Below the pieces are notes generated by a model that searched no databases, was not told the DNA's origin, and saw only the letters and a program-made list of their open reading frames with translations. The translations under genes were made by a program, and so were the position numbers. A stretch of 64,000 nt of DNA from positions 62,001-126,000 of the IMG/VR virus record IMGVR_UViG_3300026078_000017. One strand, 5' to 3'. Positions 19,848 to 63,869 of this stretch are shown here, piece by piece; positions within the stretch are counted from its first letter, which is position 1, and each line of letters opens with the position of its first letter.

Positions 19848-20891
19848 TCACTCGACGAGGGTTGTTTTAAACAAAATGGACAGTCTATCGTAGTCAACAT
19901 CCGTGACCACTCCTGCATCAATCATAGTACGAATCAATCCGAGTTTATTCATGTTTGGTTTGAAGTTATCTAGAGCAAAATCAACCTTTTGTATCTGACT
20001 TGCACTCAAGGTTGAAGAGTCAAGATACATCAGTTGCCAATTTCTTTCTAAGATAGACTTCGAGGTCAAAACGTCTGAATATGCTTTGATTTTCGACTTG
20101 CCGTCCACTTTTTCTTGTGAATACTTCATAATGTCCTCAACTTGAAGATCCACAGTGGTGTCGGCAAGAATAGGGAATCTCTTGGCAGCGGTTTTCAAAC
20201 CAATACCGTCGATTCCAGGAATATTATCTGAATTATCTCCAACTAACGTTCTTGCAAGGCAAAAGTTTCGTGGAGCTATATTGTGCTCGGTAAGAATTTT
20301 CTCAGCAGAAACCAAAATTTTCTTGCCTGGGTCGTAGATTTCTATGCTTGGGTTTTCCAAGAGCTGATAGAAGTCCTTGTCAGAAGACACAAGTACCTTT
20401 CGAGCATTCTCTTGCGCGAACTTGTTTCTCAACAAGTAGGAGATAATGTCATCACACTCTGTTTCACCCACATAAATCTGACAGACTGGAAGTTGCTTGA
20501 TGATCTGTGTGAGAAGGTGAAGTTGCTTGAGTTTGTTCTGTGTGTCTGAGAGCAGCCAGGCACGCTTGGAGTCATCCTTGTTGATGTCCTTGAAGGTTTC
20601 CTTGTCCTTGGCTCTATTGGCTTTGTAGCCTTCGTAGATTTTCTTACGACGTGGAGAAGCTCCACCTTGTTCCCACACCACGACCATTTTCTTTGGAACG
20701 AAGTTGTTGGTGAGGAAGTTGAGATACTTCAAAAACCCAACAACACCACCCACAGGGTCTCCACTCGTCGTTGTTGTCTCGTTTACAACGAACATCCGAA
20801 TAAAGATGTTCATGCCGTCGACAATCAAAATTGGACGTTCGGTCTTGTGATTTGGTTTAAATGTTAGGTTTACTGGTGTCATGTGTTCCAA
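19848..20891 (-). CDS. 5'-3' exonuclease / flap endonuclease (T4 RNase H-like)
   Basis: LIVDGMN, YKANR, ECDDII, SSDKDFYQL, LVGDNSDNIPGIDGIG. Confidence 0.92.
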   Translation of the reverse strand: MEHMTPVNLTFKPNHKTERPILIVDGMNIFIRMFVVNETTTTSGDPVGGVVGFLKYLNFLTNNFVPKKMVVVWEQGGASPRRKKIYEGYKANRAKDKETFKDINKDDSKRAWLLSDTQNKLKQLHLLTQIIKQLPVCQIYVGETECDDIISYLLRNKFAQENARKVLVSSDKDFYQLLENPSIEIYDPGKKILVSAEKILTEHNIAPRNFCLARTLVGDNSDNIPGIDGIGLKTAAKRFPILADTTVDLQVEDIMKYSQEKVDGKSKIKAYSDVLTSKSILERNWQLMYLDSSTLSASQIQKVDFALDNFKPNMNKLGLIRTMIDAGVVTDVDYDRLSILFKTTLVE

Positions 20892-21085
20892 CGACTTTCT
20901 CTGGCTTCGTTAAATGGAAGACTCAACAAAACGTACTCATGGTTCTCATCTTGTCTGAGAGTCTGTAAAGCCTTCTGGCATTTACGTTTGTGGGTAAAGC
21001 CTGCAACCAATCGACCTGTTCCCGACTGAAGGATTATGTGAACAAATCGAGTGGAAGCAGCCTTTTTCCTTTTACGATCAATCAT
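20879..21085 (-). CDS. hypothetical protein
   Basis: 68-aa ORF overlapping both neighbours. Confidence 0.5.
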   Translation of the reverse strand: MIDRKRKKAASTRFVHIILQSGTGRLVAGFTHKRKCQKALQTLRQDENHEYVLLSLPFNEARESRWNT

Positions 21086-21327
21086 TGATCCTCATCAAAG
21101 TGGTTGTAAGAAACACGATCAAATTGTTTCTTGATTAGATCTCGTTGTGTTTGTTCGAATTTTGCTAGTCTTTCGAGCATGACAGCGTACTTCTTCGCAA
21201 GAACTGCATTCTTTGGACTCTTGATGAGCCTAAGAAGTCTTGCAGCATCTCTCATCCTCTCAGGTGTGAAGTCGTTTTCTTCTTGATCCAACATAAATTG
21301 GACAAGTGATGATTTTTCGTCCATCAA
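21082..21327 (-). CDS. hypothetical protein
   Basis: 81-aa ORF with ATGA coupling. Confidence 0.55.
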   Translation of the reverse strand: MMDEKSSLVQFMLDQEENDFTPERMRDAARLLRLIKSPKNAVLAKKYAVMLERLAKFEQTQRDLIKKQFDRVSYNHFDEDQ

Positions 21328-21794
21328 ACCAAAACTCCTCTCCAGGACAATCCATAGCGACTAGAAGAATGTGGTGGTAGGGGATATATCTGCAAAGGCT
21401 GATATATGTACACGGTTTGACCTGGTTGAGAACCTAACAAGTATTCCTTTACCAGCTCTTCGGAAAATTCACTTATGTTAGATGCGGAAGGATCAGCTTC
21501 TACTTTTTCGAAAAGCTTGGAAGTGACATTTTTTATGTTGTGAACTTCTGCAATATGAGCCCTGTCATCTTTGCCGATAAACGCAGGTAAGTGTACGCCT
21601 TCAACAGAAGGCAAGTGCAAAGGAATTTGTGCAACTATCTTGAGAACCAAGTCGTTCAAGTCTGACAAGTGTGGATAATCCAACAAATATCTTGCTTGAT
21701 TTTCAAGCAGAAGCGCAGGTGTGTCTTGCTGATCTTGAGTCAAACGTTGATCGACATATCCTGCTTTAACCCATTTTTCTGTGGTCTTATTCAT
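21324..21794 (-). CDS. miniature major-capsid-protein-like protein
   Basis: EKW..AG...LLENQARYLL and YIYQPLQ...SRYG match the N- and C-terminal motifs of the MCP at 59539..61455. Confidence 0.6.
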   Translation of the reverse strand: MNKTTEKWVKAGYVDQRLTQDQQDTPALLLENQARYLLDYPHLSDLNDLVLKIVAQIPLHLPSVEGVHLPAFIGKDDRAHIAEVHNIKNVTSKLFEKVEADPSASNISEFSEELVKEYLLGSQPGQTVYIYQPLQIYPLPPHSSSRYGLSWRGVLV

Positions 21795-23637: not shown

Positions 23638-23697
23638 TGAATACCTCTGTCTTAGATTCTAACCGTTTGTCATTCTTACATAAACCCGTTTGAGTAC

Positions 23698-24606: not shown

Positions 24607-24685
24607 TGTGTTTTCTCCTAATAAAAAGCCGGTATAAGGTAGGACCGGACTAGTTCTAAGTATGTTGAACAGACCCTAAGTTGTA

Positions 24686-40529: not shown

Positions 40530-40577
40530 AATCTTTTATTTCTCTCCAATATTTCTAAGTATTGTTCTCTAGGGGTT

Positions 40578-45252: not shown

Positions 45253-45310
45253 TTTTTCTCTTCCTTGAGCTTTTTCTAAGTATTGGCCTGATTTACTTTA
45301 ATATCCCCTA

Positions 45311-54245: not shown

Positions 54246-55099
54246 AAATCGCTGTTGGTGATGCTTATGGTGCCGGGTTTGAGTTCGCTTCCAAGGACAG
54301 ACTCAAAGAACTAAACAATGACCTGAAACAGTATTATCCACATAATCTGCCTGGTCATTTACCACCTGGCTCTTATACAGATGACACCCAAATGTCAATT
54401 GCCATTTCTGAGATGATTTTGAATGACACTCCCTGGACCGTCGAAAATCTGGCACAGAAGTTTGTTGAGGTCTACAAGAGAGACCCAAGAAATGGGTATT
54501 CCCGTAAGTTTCAAGAAATCCTTGACAAGATTACCACAGGTGACGAACTGAGAGAGAAGATTATTGCTAACTCAACTGCCTGTGGGTCTGCCATGAGAGC
54601 TGTGCCAATCGGACTTCTCAAGTACGAACAAGAAATTATGGAAAAGGCTCATATTCAGGCAAGCATCACACATAACACAACAGATGGTATCATGTGTGCA
54701 AAGGCTGTGGCTCTTGCGGCACACTATGCAAGAACGTATCAACAGTGTAGCATTAATTCCTACCTCAACTGGCACCTCAAGTCTGAAATAGACTGGACAG
54801 GGTGGGAACCTGGCACTTACGTAACGTCAGCAGGCATGCCAGTAGTTCGGGCTGCTATTTCTGCCTGGAAACGCAACACAAAAATGTCGGATATTCTTAA
54901 GCAGTGTGTTGCTTATGAGGGTGACGTAGATTCGGTCAGTGCAATTGCTCTTGGCATTGCCAGCCTAGACAAGAAAGTAGAAAAAGACCTACCCGCCGTC
55001 CTCGTGGATAACCTTGAGAACAACGGGTTTGGTCGAGACTACTTGATTGAACTTGACAGGAAGCTTCTTACTCTTCCACGACTTCAAGATGCTGGTTGA
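54236..55099 (+). CDS. ADP-ribosylglycohydrolase (DraG/ARH family)
   Basis: IAVGDAYGAG, YTDDTQM, GSAMRA, ITHN, GDVDSVSAIA. Confidence 0.92.
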   Translation: MLLEIAVGDAYGAGFEFASKDRLKELNNDLKQYYPHNLPGHLPPGSYTDDTQMSIAISEMILNDTPWTVENLAQKFVEVYKRDPRNGYSRKFQEILDKITTGDELREKIIANSTACGSAMRAVPIGLLKYEQEIMEKAHIQASITHNTTDGIMCAKAVALAAHYARTYQQCSINSYLNWHLKSEIDWTGWEPGTYVTSAGMPVVRAAISAWKRNTKMSDILKQCVAYEGDVDSVSAIALGIASLDKKVEKDLPAVLVDNLENNGFGRDYLIELDRKLLTLPRLQDAG

Positions 55100-55817
55100 T
55101 ATAACCCCTGTCCTCAGAGAACAACGGGATTTCATCATCAACACCCCATTTTGAGCGTGGAGCAACAGAATCTGCAACCAAGTAGGTTTCCTTGACGATG
55201 CACCTTCCACGCTTCTGGTAAGTTGGGTAGTTTCCCCAATTCTTTCCGGTCTTGAGGAAAATCATTTCCTGAAGTTCGGCACTATTCTTGCCATCAAGCT
55301 GAGAGTGCGAGTACAAGGACCGAGCAACCATCTGAACAGAGTTTCGGGTTGCATCCTGCTGACGCCACAAGAAATAGTTGCAAACTTCACTCTCGGGCAA
55401 AACAAATGCCCGAGCATCAAATGCTGCAATCTTGGTTTCTCCGAAAATGGTTGGACTCAAGGCAGTCATGTATCCAGCAGCAATGGAAGCGGAAACCGAA
55501 ACCATTTTCTGGATCTGGTTTTCAAACCAAGGTGTGGATGAAAATCGCTTGTAGTTGTGAACCAAGACCGAGATTTCATCAGACTGCACATAAGCAATCT
55601 GTGCACCCTGAATCTGCTCACACAAGGCAATCCCAACATTATCCATTGCCGAGATGAGACGTTCATCAAATGGACGCTCACAAGAAGCAGTGTAGGTGTG
55701 AAATGCCTTGCCGTCGATTCGAAGAATGACAGGCATGCGAATTGGAAGAGACTGTCTGAAAGCCCCTTCATAGATTTTCATTCGGTCGCCAAGTGAGGTT
55801 TTATCTGATGTTCCCAT
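55068..55817 (-). CDS. thg1: tRNA(His) guanylyltransferase-like protein (Thg1/TLP)
   Basis: RIDGKAFHTYT, YVQSDEIS, QKMVS, FDAR, YFLWRQQDATRNS, KRG. Confidence 0.93.
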   Translation of the reverse strand: MGTSDKTSLGDRMKIYEGAFRQSLPIRMPVILRIDGKAFHTYTASCERPFDERLISAMDNVGIALCEQIQGAQIAYVQSDEISVLVHNYKRFSSTPWFENQIQKMVSVSASIAAGYMTALSPTIFGETKIAAFDARAFVLPESEVCNYFLWRQQDATRNSVQMVARSLYSHSQLDGKNSAELQEMIFLKTGKNWGNYPTYQKRGRCIVKETYLVADSVAPRSKWGVDDEIPLFSEDRGYINQHLEVVEE

Positions 55818-58106: not shown

Positions 58107-58781
58107 TTACTTGATTTTTGGCAATCTTAGCTTCTGCAAAAGCCAACTATAATCCATCTGTTTCAAACTAGTATCTATTTTTGGACAAAAAGTCCAATTG
58201 TTTCCTGTGTTAAAATATGGTGCATTTGGTGGAATTATAACTTCATCCAACCAAATAATTGTTGTTTCTTCAAAATAATAACCATCTTCTACTTTGCTTA
58301 AAAAACGAGGACATGCTAAACAAATTAGCTCATCAGGATTGTAATTGGCAATTACAACATGATCAGGTTTTTGATAAGAAGCAACACTAGGAGGCAAATT
58401 TAAATGATTTATTCTTTTTTGAGGCCAAAAAGGATGTAAATCATATGCAACTCTAAATTCTCCTGGAACCGAATGATCTTCTCTCCATATAGAAATTTTT
58501 CGATGGAGATCAAACAAATGTGGATGTTGTCTAAACTTTATTTGCAAATTTGGTTCTGTTTTTGTGAGAAAGACACATGAAACATTAACAAAATTACCAG
58601 ACCAATCAATTTTTGATTTTATTAGAGGTATTAATGAAGTATTGACAAGTTCATCAATAATTTTCCATTTTTTACTCCTTGGCATTTTCCCAAAATCAAT
58701 TAGTTCATTCAATTCTTCTTTAGTAAGGTGTGTAAAAGTAACCAAAACTGGCTCAATTTGGAGATTAAATGGTTTTTTCAC
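58107..58781 (-). CDS. hypothetical protein (AT-rich)
   Basis: 224 aa; a hand-counted 60-nt line is about 30% GC. Confidence 0.65.
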   Translation of the reverse strand: MKKPFNLQIEPVLVTFTHLTKEELNELIDFGKMPRSKKWKIIDELVNTSLIPLIKSKIDWSGNFVNVSCVFLTKTEPNLQIKFRQHPHLFDLHRKISIWREDHSVPGEFRVAYDLHPFWPQKRINHLNLPPSVASYQKPDHVVIANYNPDELICLACPRFLSKVEDGYYFEETTIIWLDEVIIPPNAPYFNTGNNWTFCPKIDTSLKQMDYSWLLQKLRLPKIK

Positions 58782-59439
58782 TTTTCACCCATCCACCACT
58801 GCTCTTAACCTTACCCCTGACCATCAAGTGCAAAGCCTTGTAAGAGAGCCCTCTCTGAAGAGCAAACTCTCTTAAGGAGCCTGTGACTTCTACAGTTTCT
58901 TGTGTGTTCTTGTTCACAAGAGTTACACCAGCCGAATGTCCTGCCCATAACCCATTTTTGCAGTTCTCTGCTGCCTTTGCACGGGCTTCTGGTGTTCTCT
59001 TGGCTATGGCACTTGCCAAAGCTCTTTTGGTTTTTACCTCAAGAGATGGAGACTTACAACGTTTATCTGTTAAAGGGTTTGGTGGCTGTTTGGCTCTTGA
59101 ACCCATTCTATTAGCTCTTGCTTCTTTTTCAATGTTGTAGCAATGCTTTTGGTTATCATAGTGTTTATCAAGATAGGTCTGTTCAACCGCAAGACAGTCT
59201 TCTGTTGTTCCTTGTACTATCTCAAGTACTTCAAACAGAAAATTCTCTTGACCACACTTTACGAAGTCATTTTGAAGAAATGAGTTTGTGTGCGTTCCTC
59301 CCATTAAGTTATTGAAATGGTTGTTCGCTCTTTTATAGAAGCACTTGGTACTACCAAAGTATCGTCTCCCATTTGAGAGATTCAAAATTCTATAGACGCC
59401 ACCATCACTAGCATTTGCAGAACCATAAAGTCGTTTCAT
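58765..59439 (-). mobile_element. free-standing GIY-YIG homing endonuclease (Seg-like)
   Basis: GVYRILNLSNGRRYFGST..FYKRANNH...FEVLE...EQTYLD...YN; C-terminal helix-turn-helix-like segment. Confidence 0.85.
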
Positions 59440-59538: not shown

Positions 59539-61455
59539 TTAGATGACGTTCATGTCGAGAACGGTGACAGTTGCGTAGAAGTCTGCGCGAACCATCTTTT
59601 TGCCGTAGCGAGTCATGATACCCTTACGTGGAGTGAAGTCCTCCTGAGCGTAAATAACTGGTGTCAAGATGAGTGGAACGTATGGTGCGTAAATGTAACC
59701 CGACTCAAGGAAGGTGTTACCCTTAAGACCAATCAAAATGCGGTTTGCTGGGAAGTATGGGTCCTTGTAAACCGTGTAACGGTTGTTAAGGGTACCTGCG
59801 GACTCAGCGCCGAGTGTCATGCTGTCTTGGACTTGACCATCTGTGTCAATCTTGTAGGACGACTTGTAGGTCTGCAAGTGCTCAAGGATTGTGCAAACGT
59901 CTGGGGACGTTACGATGAAGTTTGCAGAACCGCGAAGCGTCTTACGTGCGATTGTGTTTGCTGCATCGGTAATAGTCTCAAGGAGCGTCTGGTACCAGTC
60001 TTGGACGTTGACGTAAGCTTGTGGGCCTGCGGACAATGCCGAAGAGTGGAGCGCTTCTGCGCCAGTCTGCTTGTTAACGATCTTACCTGGAGCGCGGGAC
60101 CAGTAAAGGTTTGCTGCGTTTGCCTGTGTAAGAAGGTCGTTGAGGATTTCACGGTCGATGTCGAGCGTGATGTGCTCAGAAAGAATGTTTGTCAATTCAA
60201 CTTCAACGTCGATGTTGTAGAACGCTGTAAGGTCTTGTGCCATTTCTGGTGACCAACGTGCGCGCAACTTACGGGTTGTTGCTGTTACTGCAACGGACTC
60301 AATCTTGATGTCAATCTCTGGGATGACAGGCGATGGAGGGTTGATTGCGAAATCAGTTTCGAACGAAGGAATCGTAAGAGTCGAACCATCGGAGTTAACC
60401 GAAAGTGCGTCAGAGATTGCAGCCGAAGCTGTTACCTTTGTTGTTGCTGTTGCGTTTGGCTGTGGAGCTGTACCACCGTTTGCCACGCGAATGACGAACT
60501 GAATGTGGGAGCCGCCGATTGGGTCTGGTGTGAACAAACCAGATGTTGGGTCCCAAGAACCGCGCTTGTTGAGCTTACGGAGGTTGAGAACGCCGTTACC
60601 ACCTTGATACTGATCGCCCCATGCAGTTGCCGAGCCTACTGCTGAACCGAAACCAGTGATTGCAATCTGCTCAAGCGAGTTGAGGTCTGCGCCACCGATG
60701 TTTGCAGTTACTTCAGATGCGGACATGTGAAGGAATACAAAGTCAAGGGCGTTGTTTGCAAGGTCAACTTCCATCTTGGAGTCGAAAAGAGCAAAACGTG
60801 CGTTGAAACCAACGAACTGTGCGCTTGTGCCAACGACTGCCGTTGTGCCAGTTGTCCAGATAGAACCCGATGCCCAGTAACCAACAGAGTCGGTCGTTGC
60901 ATTGAGGTTAAGGCTCTGCTTGTGAACCTTTGTGAAACCTGTGCCTACAAGGTCGTACTGACCACCAGTTGCAAAGGAGCCAGAACGAATTCTTGCGCCA
61001 ACTGGGTTATTGTAGATGGAGTCACCCTTCTTGTAGGTCTCGTTAACGGAGGAGTTCGACAAGTTTACACCTGCGTCGCCACCAACGTTGTTACCATACA
61101 TGTAATCGAGATAGAACAAAAGACCCGATGGCAAGCTCATTGGCTGCACGGAAACGACTTCATTTGCAATCAAGCCGGCGAATACACGACGGACGATTGG
61201 GAATGCGACGTTTGTGAAACCAGCTACTTGACCACTCGACACGAGGTTTGCACCACCGGTCGACAAAGCATTGGACTCACGAAGGAGTTCTGCTGCTTGG
61301 TTTTCAAGGAGACGACTCATCGAGTCACGGGTGTTGCCCTTGAGACCCGAGAGAAGACCTGTTTTGTCCCACTTCTCGTTAATGCGTGGCATGTCTGCGC
61401 CGAGGGACTTTCTCGAAACGCCTTCTGCAATCATGTCTAATGAAAATGACTTCAT
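59539..61455 (-). CDS. major capsid protein (T4 gp23-like)
   Basis: LLENQ, VSVQPMSLPSGLLFYLD, TRKLRARWSPEMAQDL, IDREIL, GYIYAPYVPL, TPRKGIMTRYG. Confidence 0.96.
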   Translation of the reverse strand: MKSFSLDMIAEGVSRKSLGADMPRINEKWDKTGLLSGLKGNTRDSMSRLLENQAAELLRESNALSTGGANLVSSGQVAGFTNVAFPIVRRVFAGLIANEVVSVQPMSLPSGLLFYLDYMYGNNVGGDAGVNLSNSSVNETYKKGDSIYNNPVGARIRSGSFATGGQYDLVGTGFTKVHKQSLNLNATTDSVGYWASGSIWTTGTTAVVGTSAQFVGFNARFALFDSKMEVDLANNALDFVFLHMSASEVTANIGGADLNSLEQIAITGFGSAVGSATAWGDQYQGGNGVLNLRKLNKRGSWDPTSGLFTPDPIGGSHIQFVIRVANGGTAPQPNATATTKVTASAAISDALSVNSDGSTLTIPSFETDFAINPPSPVIPEIDIKIESVAVTATTRKLRARWSPEMAQDLTAFYNIDVEVELTNILSEHITLDIDREILNDLLTQANAANLYWSRAPGKIVNKQTGAEALHSSALSAGPQAYVNVQDWYQTLLETITDAANTIARKTLRGSANFIVTSPDVCTILEHLQTYKSSYKIDTDGQVQDSMTLGAESAGTLNNRYTVYKDPYFPANRILIGLKGNTFLESGYIYAPYVPLILTPVIYAQEDFTPRKGIMTRYGKKMVRADFYATVTVLDMNVI

Positions 61456-61490
61456 ATTCTTATCCTTCTTGAGGTTACTTGTTGTAAGTA

Positions 61491-63869
61491 TTACTTGCGA
61501 TTCTTAATTCCTGCCAAAAGCTGCCAACGTGCTGTTTCGATCTCGCCAGCCTTAGGCTGTGCGCTCTCGGTCAATCTTGCGCTTCCTGTCGAAGTAGGCT
61601 TCGAAGCCGAACCAGACAATTGGGTGGAAGATGTGCTTTCTGCGAGGATTTTCTTGATCTTGGTATAAGTCTCTTTTGCTTCTGCAAGGCTCTTAGCTTT
61701 GTCAAAATACGAAGCAATTTTTTGCTTCTGCGTCTTGGTCAAATCTTCACGAACTGCAAACTTGGAGACATACAAAGCCTTAGCTGTAAGAAGCTTAGAC
61801 TCTGAAAGTTGTGACTGGAGTGCTTTGACAGTTGTTGCTGCCTTAGCGATTACTGCTGCTTCTGTAAGAGGCTTTTTGGTAGAAGCTGGCTTCTTGGACT
61901 CCATTGGCATCTTAGATTCATCTTTACCTGGCTTGTCCTTGTCCATAAGCATGGAGGATGCGTCGTCGTCGTCTTTGCCTGCGCCCATCTCTGGTGCAGA
62001 GTCGCCGTCATCGCCTACAAGGTCAATACTAAGTGCATCGTCATCACCGGCACCGGCTGCTGCGCCCATTGCGTCGCCTGCTACTGGTTCTGCCGAAAAC
62101 TCTTCTGTTGCGCCATTAAGGAGAGCCTCAAGGTCATCAACGTCAATTTGGAAGGTAAGTTCTACTTCACCACCGCCAGCGCCTGCCATGTCATGCTCGC
62201 CACCTGCTGGTGCGTCTTCCATTGGCATCTTGGATGGACCTGCGCCCATTGGAGCTGCTGCACCTGGGGTGCCCATTGAGGTTGCATCCTCATTTTCCAT
62301 ACCACATTCCTTAAGTTCGGACTGTGCTGGAGCCTTGCCGCCTGCTGGCTTCTGGGAACCTTGATCGCCTTCTGGAACCGAAGGTGGCTTAAGGTGACCA
62401 TCTTTATCTGTACCCTTGAGAGCCGATTCTTTCTTTACGGCTGCAAGACGACGGGAAAGATTTTCCTTACGGAGTTTTGCAACTGCCTCACGGAGTTCCT
62501 TTTCGTCAAACTCAAGAATCGAGTTGTTACCCTTTTTGTCAATAAGAGCCTCACCAGAGTGAACCTTTGGAGAAGTGTTCTCTGCGCCCTTTGTCTTTTC
62601 GCCGTCACCGAAGTTAGACGATGCTGGTGCGGACTCTGCGATACCTGCACCTGGCTCCTTGATAAGAGCGTCTGGGTTGTGAACTCTTGGAGTCTTTGTC
62701 TGTGCATCACCCTCAACCTTGCCATCACCGAAGTTCGAGGATGCTGGTGCATCTTCACCAAGGAGGGACTCGGCCATATTGGACATTTCGCTGTCGTCTG
62801 CCTTTGGAGCTTCACCTTCTTTGAACAAGTCAACGCCAGGTGCTACGCCAGATGTCTTTTCTGCATGTGCAGTTGCTTTATCAGCGGTTGCTGGTCCGAG
62901 TGCGTCTTCCTCGAAAAGCTTTGCTGCAAATTCTTTGAGAGTGGTCATCGATGCTCCTTTATTCTCTTTGTAACTAGTAGTTGATTCTGCTTCATTCAGT
63001 TTCATGAACAAAAATTCAAGCTTATTTTCGGCCAAGCGAGCCTTTTTAGATGAAATAACGTCTTCATTGACCATCTCATCCAGTTTTTCACACAAGGTAA
63101 ATAGTTTCGATTTCAACGATTCTTTTACCAACATAGGTACGTTGCCCTTGAAATAAAGATAATCAATCTTTTCGGCAACCACGCGAACTTCTTCTTTGAA
63201 GCCAAAAATCTTAGCCTCACCAGCAACTACTGGTGTTGGTTCGTTTTCGTCTTCTGGGTTTGTTGGAGGAAGACCTGTTGGCGACGTTGGCGCCTCTGGG
63301 CCTTGCGTTGGTGCGGTGCCGGTTGGTCCGATTGGAGCCACAGGAGCAGGCGCAGCAGGTTGACCAGAACTTGCGTCAACCGGAGAAGCAGGGGGCGAAA
63401 CCATCTCAGGACTTGCTGGCGCATTAGGTGTTTCTCCTTGCGCACCAAGAGAATCCATGCCTCCCGCAACTGGAGGAGCTGCCTCAGCGCCGCCACCACC
63501 AAGTGAGAAAAGCTGCTGGAAATCTACGGTGATTTTGCCTTCATCATCTGGCATTGGCATTCCTACCAAACCATCCGATGGAGAGATTGGGGCAGCATTT
63601 GGCATGTCACCAGGGGTCATTGTAGGTTCCTCAGGAGAAACCTCGGCAGAAGACAAGGAAGCAAGGTCGCCTGTGTCTGCAACGCCGTCTATTCCACCAG
63701 GTGCATCTTCTTCACCAAACAAAAATCTGCTTGCGTCAGCAGCTTCTGTGGCGATCATTTTCTTGATCACTGGGGCTACAGCCTCGATGATTTTGTTTCT
63801 TGCATCGATCTCGGCTATTTCTTTGAGTTTCTTAGCCTCAATAATTGATTGTTTGTAAAGCTCGCTCAT
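61491..63869 (-). CDS. prohead core / scaffolding protein
   Basis: Acidic, Pro/Gly-rich; directly upstream of the MCP; many [IL]xE sites; C-terminal RWQLLAGIK. Confidence 0.8.
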   Translation of the reverse strand: MSELYKQSIIEAKKLKEIAEIDARNKIIEAVAPVIKKMIATEAADASRFLFGEEDAPGGIDGVADTGDLASLSSAEVSPEEPTMTPGDMPNAAPISPSDGLVGMPMPDDEGKITVDFQQLFSLGGGGAEAAPPVAGGMDSLGAQGETPNAPASPEMVSPPASPVDASSGQPAAPAPVAPIGPTGTAPTQGPEAPTSPTGLPPTNPEDENEPTPVVAGEAKIFGFKEEVRVVAEKIDYLYFKGNVPMLVKESLKSKLFTLCEKLDEMVNEDVISSKKARLAENKLEFLFMKLNEAESTTSYKENKGASMTTLKEFAAKLFEEDALGPATADKATAHAEKTSGVAPGVDLFKEGEAPKADDSEMSNMAESLLGEDAPASSNFGDGKVEGDAQTKTPRVHNPDALIKEPGAGIAESAPASSNFGDGEKTKGAENTSPKVHSGEALIDKKGNNSILEFDEKELREAVAKLRKENLSRRLAAVKKESALKGTDKDGHLKPPSVPEGDQGSQKPAGGKAPAQSELKECGMENEDATSMGTPGAAAPMGAGPSKMPMEDAPAGGEHDMAGAGGGEVELTFQIDVDDLEALLNGATEEFSAEPVAGDAMGAAAGAGDDDALSIDLVGDDGDSAPEMGAGKDDDDASSMLMDKDKPGKDESKMPMESKKPASTKKPLTEAAVIAKAATTVKALQSQLSESKLLTAKALYVSKFAVREDLTKTQKQKIASYFDKAKSLAEAKETYTKIKKILAESTSSTQLSGSASKPTSTGSARLTESAQPKAGEIETARWQLLAGIKNRK
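62606..62750 (-). repeat. internal 40-aa-period repeat in the scaffold protein
   Basis: APASSNFGDG encoded twice, 120 nt apart (62606-62630 and 62726-62750). Confidence 0.85.

What the first reader, a model, noticed from the sequence alone, without database searches (positions are those of the whole stretch)
21324..21794. A 156-aa miniature paralog of the major capsid protein in the replication block
Seen, collinear with the MCP: EKWVKAG-(16)-LLLENQARYLL vs EKWDKTG-(14)-RLLENQAAELL; LNDLVLKIVAQI vs FTNVAFPIVRRV; EVHNIKNVTSKL vs KIESVAVTATTRKL; VYIYQPLQIYP...SRYG vs GYIYAPYVPLILTP...TRYG. Most of the HK97 fold in between is deleted, and the gene sits among early/middle genes. Inference: a capsid mimic that could decoy capsid-sensing defences (for example CapRel- or Avs-type), or an assembly/size modulator.
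Basis: partly seen in the sequence, partly recalled or inferred. Interest (0 to 1): 0.7.

Follow-up and report, generated by a model that had tools for sequence, protein, structure and literature searches.

The report
Miniature capsid-protein paralog in replication operon
A jumbo T4-like phage carries a small, selected gene that is a stripped-down copy of its own major capsid protein (leader peptide, N-arm and a skeleton of the capsid fold, but no ring-forming domain); it is one of at least four stand-alone capsid-protein pieces in this genome, which suggests molecular mimicry of unassembled capsid protein.

Summary
The ORF (21324-21794, minus strand, 156 aa) is real. It is translationally coupled to dUTPase upstream and a small ORF downstream, inside a RecA-dUTPase-FEN-DnaB block. 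Its first ~70 residues are homologous to residues 22-109 of the phage's gp23-type MCP: the propeptide motif KW..G..LENQA..LL, the N-arm, and the LP of VQPMSLP (hhalign E 6e-9; an HMM of the family's N-termini finds only the MCP among 3,912 ORFs, E 8e-9). Beyond residue 70, sequence similarity is not above chance. A confident AF2 model (pLDDT 92) nevertheless superposes on a Gp23-family model (TM 0.76, 146/156 residues). Its best PDB match is T4 gp24, followed by dozens of HK97-fold capsids. The family has seven members (155-166 aa), is under purifying selection, and sits as a fast-diverging cassette in a variable slot. The inferred losses are the insertion domain, E-loop, A-domain and the MCP's conserved maturation Glu, so it should not build capsomers. 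The same genome holds three more stand-alone MCP pieces: an N-arm/Gol-like piece and two A-domain-only proteins. So the miniature-MCP reading is supported; function is untested. I favour a mimic of unassembled MCP (decoy or antagonist), with chaperonin or assembly-line competition as the main rival.

The parts
21324..21794 (-). Gene for the 156-aa miniature MCP paralog (P0001), stop codon included.
   Evidence: ORF list and translation. Its ATG overlaps the dUTPase stop (ATGA), and its TGA overlaps the next ORF's ATG (TGATG). Seven-member family of 155-166 aa. dN/dS is 0.06-0.19 for the closest pairs.
21675..21794 (-). Codons 1-40: copy of the MCP propeptide motif (KW..G..LENQA..LL). It holds 7 of the family's 13 invariant residues.
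   Evidence: The same motif is visible in T2 gp23 and other gp23-type MCPs.
21576..21674 (-). Codons 41-73: N-arm-like helix (41-60) and first strands, with the invariant L69-P70-A71. They align to MCP 63-109 (FTNVAFPIVRRV..VSVQPMSLP).
   Evidence: hhalign with the diverse gp23/gp24 profile, E 5.7e-9 over mini 1-70. Residue mapping. Secondary structure.
21327..21575 (-). Codons 74-156: strand, short helix, spine-like helix and C-terminal beta-hairpin. This is read as the HK97 P-domain skeleton, with no significant sequence similarity to the MCP.
   Evidence: AF2 model. Structural matches. Sequence tests not significant. The domain assignment is inferred.
59539..61455 (-). gp23-type major capsid protein gene (P0002, 638 aa), the parent of the paralog.
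   Evidence: Pfam Gp23 E 1.7e-78, PHROG major head protein. Matches solved T4 gp23 structures.
61129..61392 (-). MCP codons 22-109: propeptide motif, predicted maturation site (LLRE60|S, Glu60 invariant in the clade), N-arm and VQPMSLP. This is the segment shared with the mini-protein.
   Evidence: Mature T4 gp23* residue 19 aligns to MCP residue 73. A gp21-type protease is present in the genome. The cleavage site is inferred by analogy with T4.
21082..21327 (-). 81-aa ORF (o81), translationally coupled downstream. A homolog lies next to the mini gene in two other lineages, with the gene order swapped. Possible partner.
   Evidence: No Pfam or PHROG hit.

Best explanation
SHOWN. The ORF is a maintained gene that encodes a drastically reduced paralog of the phage's own gp23-type major capsid protein. 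It keeps:
- the N-terminal propeptide motif;
- the N-arm helix and the 'LP' strand;
- by predicted structure, a spine-helix and beta-sheet skeleton that superposes on gp23/gp24.

INFERRED. It has lost the insertion domain, the E-loop and the capsomer-forming A-domain. It has also lost the invariant Glu of the MCP's maturation site. It therefore cannot build capsomers and is probably not processed like the MCP. It is made from the RecA-dUTPase-FEN operon rather than with the head genes.

MOST LIKELY MECHANISM (inferred). It acts as a soluble, assembly-incompetent stand-in for the unassembled MCP precursor. It would occupy a factor that recognises the precursor's N-terminal part. My first choice for that factor is a host surveillance or host-factor complex that senses nascent capsid protein through short motifs (Lit-, CapRel- or EF-Tu-type). 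The mini-protein would then work as a decoy or competitive antagonist before the real MCP accumulates. The three other stand-alone MCP pieces in this genome (an N-arm/Gol-like piece and two A-domain-only proteins) would cover other sensed surfaces.

My confidence that it is an MCP-derived mini-paralog is about 0.85. That it works by mimicry or competition, about 0.5. That the competed partner is a defence sensor, about 0.35.
For: Homology and structure:
- N-terminal homology.
- Structure: AF2 pLDDT 91.9; Atlas rank 1 is a Gp23 cluster at TM 0.76 with 146/156 residues aligned; T4 gp24 is rank 1 of 48,161 PDB chains, and about 31 of the top 50 hits are HK97 folds; at least 45 of 50.

A selected gene:
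- Seven intact members of 155-166 aa at 27-77% identity.
- dN/dS 0.06-0.19 for the closest pairs.

Accessory cassette:
- The gene is present in three lineages and absent in three at the dUTPase-FEN slot.
- Protein identity is 60% against 90-95% for the flanking genes in the same genome pair.
- pS is 0.75 against 0.36-0.50 for the flanks.
- Other members lie among small ORFs, one directly upstream of a NADAR gene and near an Acb5-family gene.

Loss of the cleavage Glu:
- E60 is invariant in the MCPs.
- Only 1 of 7 minis has Glu at the aligned position.

Other MCP pieces in the genome:
- P0129 vs MCP 74-123, 50% identity, E 1e-12.
- A133 vs MCP 449-549, E 7e-11, and A135, E 8e-4.
- The mini-protein and A133 do not overlap.

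Literature:
- The first quarter of gp23 engages GroEL and EF-Tu, and Gol triggers Lit (PMC3012670; PMC3014915).
- MCP-sensing Avs7/8/10, Lit and CapRel (PMC13581612).
Against: - No partner was identified; the complex prediction with the MCP gave no verdict.
- No sensor of the gp23 propeptide or P-domain is known.
- Avs7/8/10 bind the A-domain, which this protein lacks.
- Apart from the N-terminal motif and a few residues, the surface has diverged beyond recognition from the highly conserved MCP, which is odd for a surface mimic.
- The motif's conservation could be purely structural (packing on the P-domain skeleton), because the whole model, N-terminal helices included, superposes on a gp23 precursor model.
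- Expression timing is inferred only from gene order. No RNA data were found.
- Only the best of five AF2 models was highly confident; the others scored 64-80.
- The domain assignment (P-domain kept, A-domain lost) rests on ranges and length, not on a residue-level superposition.
Confidence: 0.4

Rival explanations
1. Chaperonin or assembly-line competitor. The conserved N-terminal leader sends the mini-protein to the GroEL-type chaperonin (the phage's own Cpn60/Cpn10 or the host's) or to the prohead core or protease. There it tunes MCP folding or the timing of head assembly, or simply uses the MCP's folding route.
For: - In T4 the gp23 N-terminus strongly targets fusion proteins to GroEL (PMC3012670 citing Snyder & Tarkowski 2005).
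- The shared motif lies in that leader and is conserved across gp23-type MCPs.
- It is the most conserved part of the mini family.
- The genome encodes Cpn60 and Cpn10 and a gp21-type protease.
Against: - Distribution is accessory: many close relatives with a near-identical MCP lack the gene.
- It is not in the head module.
- It shows cassette-like divergence.
- The primary T4 paper could not be read to see which residues matter.
- Co-occurrence with Cpn60 in other members was not testable because the contigs are short.
Confidence: 0.28
2. Prohead-targeted internal protein. The MCP-like leader works as a capsid-targeting sequence (like the CTS of T4 IPI-III and Alt). The protein is packed into heads and injected into the next host.
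For: - The MCP propeptide faces the prohead interior in T4-type heads (established knowledge; PMC3012670, describes CTS-directed packaging).
- The motif is shared only by the MCP and the mini-protein.
Against: - The Glu at the MCP's predicted cleavage site is not conserved in the family, 1 of 7.
- The gene sits in a DNA-metabolism operon, not with head genes.
- A whole P-domain skeleton is not needed for targeting.
Confidence: 0.1
3. Evolutionary debris. It is a partial MCP duplicate (for example a by-product of homing-endonuclease activity near capsid genes) that is drifting without a specific function.
For: - Homing endonuclease genes lie next to the MCP (GIY-YIG) and next to the A-domain pieces (HNH).
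- The family is rare.
Against: - Seven intact members of conserved length at 27-77% identity.
- dN/dS 0.06-0.19.
- Thirteen invariant residues.
- A confidently foldable compact model.
- Tight translational coupling.
Confidence: 0.07
4. Not MCP-derived. An unrelated small alpha/beta protein captured or converged on only the 40-residue leader motif, and the HK97 resemblance of the rest is a modelling artefact.
For: - Sequence similarity beyond residue ~70 is not significant.
- Four of the five AF2 models were less confident.
Against: - TM 0.76 over 146 residues to a Gp23 model.
- More than 100-fold enrichment of HK97 folds among the top PDB hits in two searches.
- The alignment extends through the N-arm to the LP of VQPMSLP.
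- The structural match to gp24 ends at residue 382, just after its RYA motif at 378-380.
Confidence: 0.08

Closest known systems
T4 gp24 (capsid vertex protein), the classical paralog of gp23
   Different: gp24 is full-size (427 aa), with a complete HK97 fold. It forms pentamers, is encoded next to gene 23 and is a virion protein. The mini-protein has 156 aa, appears to lack the A-domain, the E-loop and the insertion domain, and sits in a replication operon as an accessory gene.
Family 4 'A-domain' encapsulins (PF08967/DUF1884; PMC8346489)
   Same: They are a precedent for a severely truncated HK97 fold kept as an independent small protein of about 100 aa.
   Different: They keep only the A-domain and are cellular (archaea and a few Bacteroidota), lying beside enzymes. 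The mini-protein keeps the complementary part (leader, N-arm, P-domain skeleton) and is phage-encoded. The two A-domain-only ORFs at the left end of this genome are the closer analogue of Family 4.
SaPIbov5 Ccm and cf-PICI capsid homologs (size-redirecting MCP homologs)
   Same: They are MCP-fold proteins encoded apart from the helper's MCP that interfere with capsid assembly. They appear among the structural hits.
   Different: They have complete HK97 folds, co-assemble into shells and belong to satellites. The mini-protein lacks the ring-forming domain and belongs to the phage itself.
N-terminal leader and Gol region of T4 gp23
   Same: The shared motif lies in the cleaved N-terminal leader, which in T4 directs fusion proteins to GroEL. 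The adjacent N-arm/VQPM region is the Gol segment, which binds EF-Tu and triggers Lit.
   Different: Those are parts of the MCP itself, not separate genes. In the mini-protein the Gol-equivalent stretch has largely diverged; only the LP is kept. The second small protein, P0129, keeps that stretch at 50% identity.
T4 internal proteins (IPI-III, Alt) with a capsid-targeting sequence
   Same: They are small accessory proteins carrying an N-terminal peptide related to head assembly, and some are anti-defence proteins.
   Different: The CTS is about 10 residues, is followed by a gp21 cleavage site, and is not derived from gp23. The mini-protein lacks a conserved cleavage Glu and carries a capsid-fold body.
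DSAD1-type competitive anti-defence proteins (PMC11087589, abstract seen)
   Same: They share the proposed logic: a phage protein counteracts a sensor that is triggered by a structural protein.
   Different: I know of no report that DSAD1 derives from the trigger itself. No sensor or binding is shown for the mini-protein.

Membership tests
gp23-type major capsid protein family (Pfam PF07068, HK97 fold) | Significant sequence or profile similarity to family members | tested here: met
   Met for residues 1-70 only: hhalign E 5.7e-9 vs a gp23/gp24 profile, HMM E 8e-9. The Pfam model itself, which starts at the N-arm, gives no hit.
gp23-type major capsid protein family (Pfam PF07068, HK97 fold) | HK97-type three-dimensional core | tested here: met
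   The predicted model superposes on a Gp23 cluster model at TM 0.76 with 146/156 residues. T4 gp24 is the top PDB hit and HK97 folds dominate the lists. This is a prediction, not an experiment.
gp23-type major capsid protein family (Pfam PF07068, HK97 fold) | Complete fold, including the A-domain that forms hexamers and pentamers, and the E-loop | tested here: not met
   The protein has 156 aa against 638. No counterpart of MCP 447-549 was found, whereas A133 and A135 match exactly that part. The assignment is inferred from ranges and length.
gp23-type major capsid protein family (Pfam PF07068, HK97 fold) | Conserved maturation cleavage site after the leader (L-x-E) | tested here: not met
   Glu60 is invariant in 26 MCPs. 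At the aligned position only 1 of 7 minis has Glu.
gp23-type major capsid protein family (Pfam PF07068, HK97 fold) | Encoded in the head module and present in virions | tested here: not met
   The gene lies between dUTPase and FEN in a replication/recombination block. Virion presence is not testable here.
T4-type internal proteins with a capsid-targeting sequence | Short N-terminal CTS followed by a prohead-protease site, and packaging into heads | tested here: not met
   There is no conserved cleavage Glu. Packaging is not testable.
Family 4 A-domain encapsulins | Protein corresponds to the HK97 A-domain only | tested here: not met
   The matched parts are the leader, N-arm and P-domain-like skeleton. 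There is no similarity to the genome's A-domain-only ORFs.
GroEL-directed proteins carrying the gp23 N-terminal leader | Presence of the conserved gp23 leader motif | tested here: met
   The KW..G..LENQA..LL motif is shared with MCPs of this clade, of Flavobacterium phage immuto, of Microcystis phage Mel-JY01 and of record LR756508. The pattern is also recognisable in T2.
GroEL-directed proteins carrying the gp23 N-terminal leader | Physical binding to the chaperonin | not testable with these tools
   Only a literature precedent for T4 is available. Cpn60 and Cpn10 are present in the genome.
Anti-defence decoys or antagonists of capsid sensors | Binds the sensor and blocks activation by the MCP | not testable with these tools
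   Host and sensors are unknown. The evidence is circumstantial only. An Avs7/8/10-type target is unlikely because those sensors bind the A-domain.

The most novel reading that the evidence does not exclude
This phage lineage has taken its major capsid protein apart into separately encoded, assembly-incompetent pieces:
- leader, N-arm and P-domain skeleton (this ORF);
- an N-arm/Gol-like segment fused to another domain (P0129);
- two A-domain-only proteins (A133, A135).

It would deploy them as a domain-wise decoy repertoire. Each piece would blunt a different class of capsid-sensing host immunity: motif sensors of the Lit or CapRel kind, and A-domain binders of the Avs7/8/10 kind. A further possibility is that the P-domain piece and an A-domain piece pair up into a split HK97 unit.
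Probability: 0.25. Interest if true: 0.9.

Novelty: new variant of a known kind. Interest (0 to 1): 0.72.

Why it matters
Capsid proteins are now known to be major triggers of bacterial immunity (Lit, CapRel, Avs7/8/10, Dsr1, some CBASS). I found no report of a phage counter-measure built from the capsid protein itself. A selected, fast-evolving, assembly-incompetent mini-copy of the MCP, together with three more stand-alone MCP pieces in one genome, makes that idea directly testable.

Even if the role turns out to be chaperonin- or assembly-related, two things remain of interest. It would be a rare case of an HK97 fold pared down to its leader, N-arm and P-domain half, the complement of the A-domain-only encapsulins. 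It would also give a handle on what the conserved gp23 leader motif binds.

The family has no Pfam or PHROG model and is absent from cultured phages.

Tried and rejected
- Pfam, PHROG and PDB sequence searches with the protein or the family profile found nothing.
- tblastn and megablast against 50,697 phage records found nothing.
- The first AF2 run, with four sequences, gave pLDDT 47.6 and was unusable. The ESM Atlas's own model is poor, and its feature search was empty.
- Foldseek found nothing below E 0.1 against PDB and AFDB clusters, and nothing below E 7e-3 against BFVD. The fold emerged only with the Foldseek-independent aligner and the Atlas shape search.
- Complex prediction for MCP plus mini gave no verdict (score 0.00), which is evidence neither for nor against binding.
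- Single-sequence and profile chain alignments of residues 71-156 against the MCP were not significant. hhalign -glob was unsuited to the large deletions.
- A search for a third protein with the leader motif in the genome found none.
- Recent gene conversion between the 5' ends of the two genes was rejected; only the codons of conserved residues match.
- The T4-type late promoter TATAAATA is not enriched: 1 match against 0.6 expected. The sigma-70 scan was uninformative.
- RNA-seq evidence: only DNA runs hold the sequence.
- The MCP of the phage carrying P0005 could not be reached, so co-variation of the mini and cognate MCP leaders was not tested.
- Single-sequence pattern scan of IMG/VR for close relatives of A133: none found.

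Full report
**1. What is at the coordinates**

Window 21324-21794 (minus strand) is an ATG-started ORF of 156 codons.
- Its ATG overlaps the stop of the dUTPase gene upstream (ATGA).
- Its TGA overlaps the ATG of an 81-codon ORF downstream (TGATG).

The gene order on the minus strand is: gp32-like gene, a strong terminator-like hairpin, RecA, dUTPase, mini, o81, o68, 5'-3' exonuclease (FEN), DnaB-type helicase, RNR.

The window is bases 62,001-126,000 of a 320,479-bp IMG/VR virus record from a rhizosphere metagenome.

It has 638 aa and matches Pfam Gp23 at E 1.7e-78. Its nearest cultured relatives are about 45% identical: Flavobacterium phage immuto and Microcystis phage Mel-JY01.

**2. Is the similarity real?**

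The N-terminal block is real.
- BLASTP gives 16/38 identities, E 1e-4.
- No shuffle of 1000 reaches the observed local score.
- An HMM of 121 clade MCPs hits each of the five mini-family members tested, and only at MCP positions 23-62.
- Profile-profile comparison gives 95% probability, E 3e-8.
- An HMM built only from the seven mini N-termini finds the MCP as the single other hit among all 3,912 stop-to-stop ORFs of the genome (E 8e-9). It also finds the MCPs of immuto, Mel-JY01 and LR756508 (E 5e-10 to 1e-8).

With a more diverse gp23/gp24 profile the significant alignment grows to mini 1-70 vs MCP 22-109 (E 5.7e-9).
- It puts the family-invariant L69-P70 on the LP of the MCP's VQPMSLP motif.
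- Nine of the ten family-invariant residues in this stretch face identical MCP residues.

Beyond residue ~70 the sequence signal is not above chance.
- The profile chain alignment is reached by 27 of 300 shuffles.
- YIYQP/YIYAP has E 0.3-0.4.

**3. Which part of the MCP is shared**

Mature T4 gp23* starts at residue 66 of gp23. Its residue 19 aligns to MCP residue 73, so MCP 24-62 lies in the part equivalent to the cleaved T4 propeptide.

The clade MCPs have an invariant Glu60 in L-R/K-E|S. This resembles the L-x-E sites of the T4 prohead protease (my knowledge), and the genome encodes a gp21-type protease. The cleavage site is therefore inferred, not shown.

The motif KW..LLEG..A..(L/F)ENQ is recognisable in T2, cyanophage, Vibrio phage and GAP32 MCP leaders.

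According to a T4 head review, the gp23 N-terminus strongly targets fusion proteins to GroEL (PMC3012670). The next segment (N-arm and VQPM) is the most conserved gp23 region. It is the Gol region, which binds EF-Tu and triggers the Lit protease (PMC3014915).

**4. The family**

An exhaustive phmmer search of 1.84 billion cluster representatives found three relatives. A profile search and locus scans raised the family to seven members of 155-166 aa, 27-77% identical.

Thirteen residues are invariant: seven in the leader motif, then LPA, P133 and R152-G153.

The closest pairs give dN/dS 0.19 and about 0.06, so the gene is maintained by selection.

It is also an accessory cassette.
- At the dUTPase-FEN slot, three lineages carry it, always beside an o81 homolog but with the gene order swapped.
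- Three lineages carry other small ORFs or nothing.
- Between two relatives whose flanking genes are 90-95% identical, the mini-proteins are 60% identical.
- Their synonymous sites are saturated: pS 0.75 against 0.36-0.50 for the flanks.
- Other members lie in different neighbourhoods of small ORFs, one directly upstream of a NADAR gene and near an Acb5-family gene.
- The MCP has more than 7,800 homologs in the same database.

**5. Fold**

With four sequences AF2 failed. With seven, the best model has pLDDT 91.9 and pTM 0.87, while the other four models score 64-80.

The model has three N-terminal helices (2-10, 20-39, 41-60), short strands (64-87), two helices (89-100, 104-118) and a C-terminal hairpin (128-138, 147-155).

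Foldseek found nothing convincing. Other searches did.
- The second-look search gave at least 45 of 50.
- The ESM Atlas shape search put a T4-like Gp23 cluster first: TM 0.76 by query, 146 of 156 residues aligned, rmsd 3.1 A. Other capsid families followed.

From the ranges, the length and the sequence anchors, I infer two things.
- The protein keeps the leader, the N-arm and a P-domain-like skeleton.
- It lacks the insertion domain, the E-loop and the A-domain.

This is an inference. No residue-level superposition was available.

**6. More MCP pieces in the same genome (outside the window)**

A Pfam Gp23 scan of the whole record found a third hit. This is P0129, 157 aa, at G000:C1:222619-223092.
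- Its residues 5-54 are 50% identical to MCP 74-123, the N-arm and VQPMSLPSG (that is, Gol-equivalent) segment, E 1e-12.
- A syntenic homolog occurs in another viral contig.

The clade MCP HMM then revealed two tandem ORFs at the left end of the record.
- A133 matches MCP 449-549 (32% identity, E 7e-11).
- A135 matches the same part of the MCP (E 8e-4).
- They are paralogs of each other (E 7e-6).
- By position after the spine helix, they are A-domain-only proteins.

The mini family and A133 share no similarity, so the pieces are complementary. Immuto, Mel-JY01 and LR756508 show a single Gp23 hit each; T2 has gp23 and gp24.

**7. How it most likely works**

Shown: a selected, accessory, MCP-derived mini-protein that shares the MCP's leader, N-arm and core skeleton.

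Inferred:
- It cannot form capsomers, because it has no A-domain.
- It is not processed like the MCP, because the cleavage Glu is not conserved.
- It is expressed with DNA-metabolism genes, judging from the tight coupling within that operon. A terminator-like hairpin separates the operon from the gp32-like gene.
- A short motif found upstream of the MCP and other structural genes is absent upstream of this operon. This last point is weak evidence.

The most economical mechanism is mimicry. The protein stands in for unassembled MCP precursor and occupies something that recognises its N-terminal part.

I favour a host sensing or host-factor complex as that partner, which would make the protein a decoy or antagonist. 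My probability is about 0.35. The reasons are its accessory, cassette-like, fast-diverging nature, and the presence of three more MCP pieces that match surfaces known to be sensed: the A-domain by Avs7/8/10, and short motifs by Lit and CapRel (PMC13581612).

That paper also argues against this particular piece being an Avs7/8/10 decoy, since those sensors bind the A-domain.

The main rival, at about 0.28, is competition on the chaperonin or assembly line. It rests on the T4 GroEL precedent and on the phage's own Cpn60 and Cpn10. The patchy distribution weakens it.

The minor rivals are a packaged internal protein, drifting debris, and a non-homologous body with a captured leader.

**8. Comparison and novelty**

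The closest known things are:
- T4 gp24, a full-size paralog;
- Family 4 A-domain encapsulins, a truncated HK97 fold that keeps the complementary half and is cellular (PMC8346489);
- satellite Ccm-type MCP homologs, which have full folds and co-assemble;
- the gp23 leader and Gol segments themselves.

The protein fails the membership tests for a functional capsid protein: complete fold, cleavage site, head-module location. It is therefore best filed as a new variant of a known kind, a reduced HK97-fold paralog. No family model exists for it, and it has no cultured representative. My literature searches found no report of phage-encoded stand-alone MCP fragments or capsid-derived decoys. That library is incomplete.

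**9. Verdict**

Interest is 0.72.

Noticed in passing
outside the window: G000:C1:222619-223092 (-), = L032:1192-1665: A second small MCP-derived protein (P0129, 157 aa). Its residues 5-54 are 50% identical to MCP 74-123, the N-arm and VQPMSLPSG segment (the T4 Gol-equivalent region); E 1e-12, Pfam Gp23 hit. This is fused to an unrelated domain of about 100 aa, possibly a small beta-barrel (low-confidence model). A syntenic homolog lies in L034, beside an IMPDH/GMP-reductase-like gene.
   Followed up: partly
outside the window: G000:C1:645-1451 (-), = L069: Two tandem ORFs (133 and ~134 aa) are A-domain-only paralogs of the MCP. A133 matches MCP 449-549 at E 7e-11, A135 at E 8e-4, and they match each other at E 7e-6. 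An HNH endonuclease-like ORF lies immediately upstream (1455-1886). A single-sequence scan of IMG/VR found no close relatives.
   Followed up: partly
outside the window: G000:C1:133998-135632 (+) and 143360-143599 (-): The phage encodes its own GroEL-type (Cpn60, E 2e-57) and GroES-type (Cpn10, E 2e-12) chaperonin genes. It also encodes a gp21-type prohead protease at 127011-127439 (-).
   Followed up: partly
window 20879-21327 (-): Two small ORFs (o81, o68) follow the mini gene. Homologs of o81 (38-44% identity) sit next to the mini gene in two other lineages, but on its other side, so the pair may be a two-gene module. Neither has a Pfam or PHROG hit.
   Followed up: partly
window 58765-59439 (-): A GIY-YIG homing-endonuclease gene (PHROG 314, E 2e-23) lies about 100 bp downstream of the MCP gene.
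   Followed up: no
L013:2031-2701: In one relative the RecA gene matches in two pieces separated by about 670 bp. This suggests an intron, an intein or an inserted mobile element in recA.
   Followed up: no
window 61491-63869 (-): A 792-aa ORF directly upstream of the MCP has no PHROG hit. By position it is a candidate scaffold or prohead-core protein.
   Followed up: no
window 24654-24663, 40553-40562, 45274-45283, 61482-61491 (-): The motif ATACTTA[GC]AA occurs five times in the 320-kb genome (about 1.2 expected). Four of these lie immediately upstream of minus-strand genes: the MCP, two structural-region genes and the gp32-like gene. It is a candidate phage promoter element. TTATGTAAG precedes the RecA-to-FEN operon at 23675-23683. 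No T4-type TATAAATA enrichment was seen.
   Followed up: partly
window 55068-55817 (-): A tRNA-His guanylyltransferase (Thg1-like) gene, PHROG 4717, E 2.5e-88.
   Followed up: no
model of window 21324-21794 vs BFVD: The best viral-structure neighbours are small uncharacterised proteins of T4-like and jumbo phages (Sinorhizobium phiM9, Erwinia Alexandra, Agrobacterium Atu_ph07, Synechococcus S-CAM7). The matches are weak (E 7e-3 to 0.2) but recurrent. Whether these are further reduced capsid-fold proteins was not examined.
   Followed up: no
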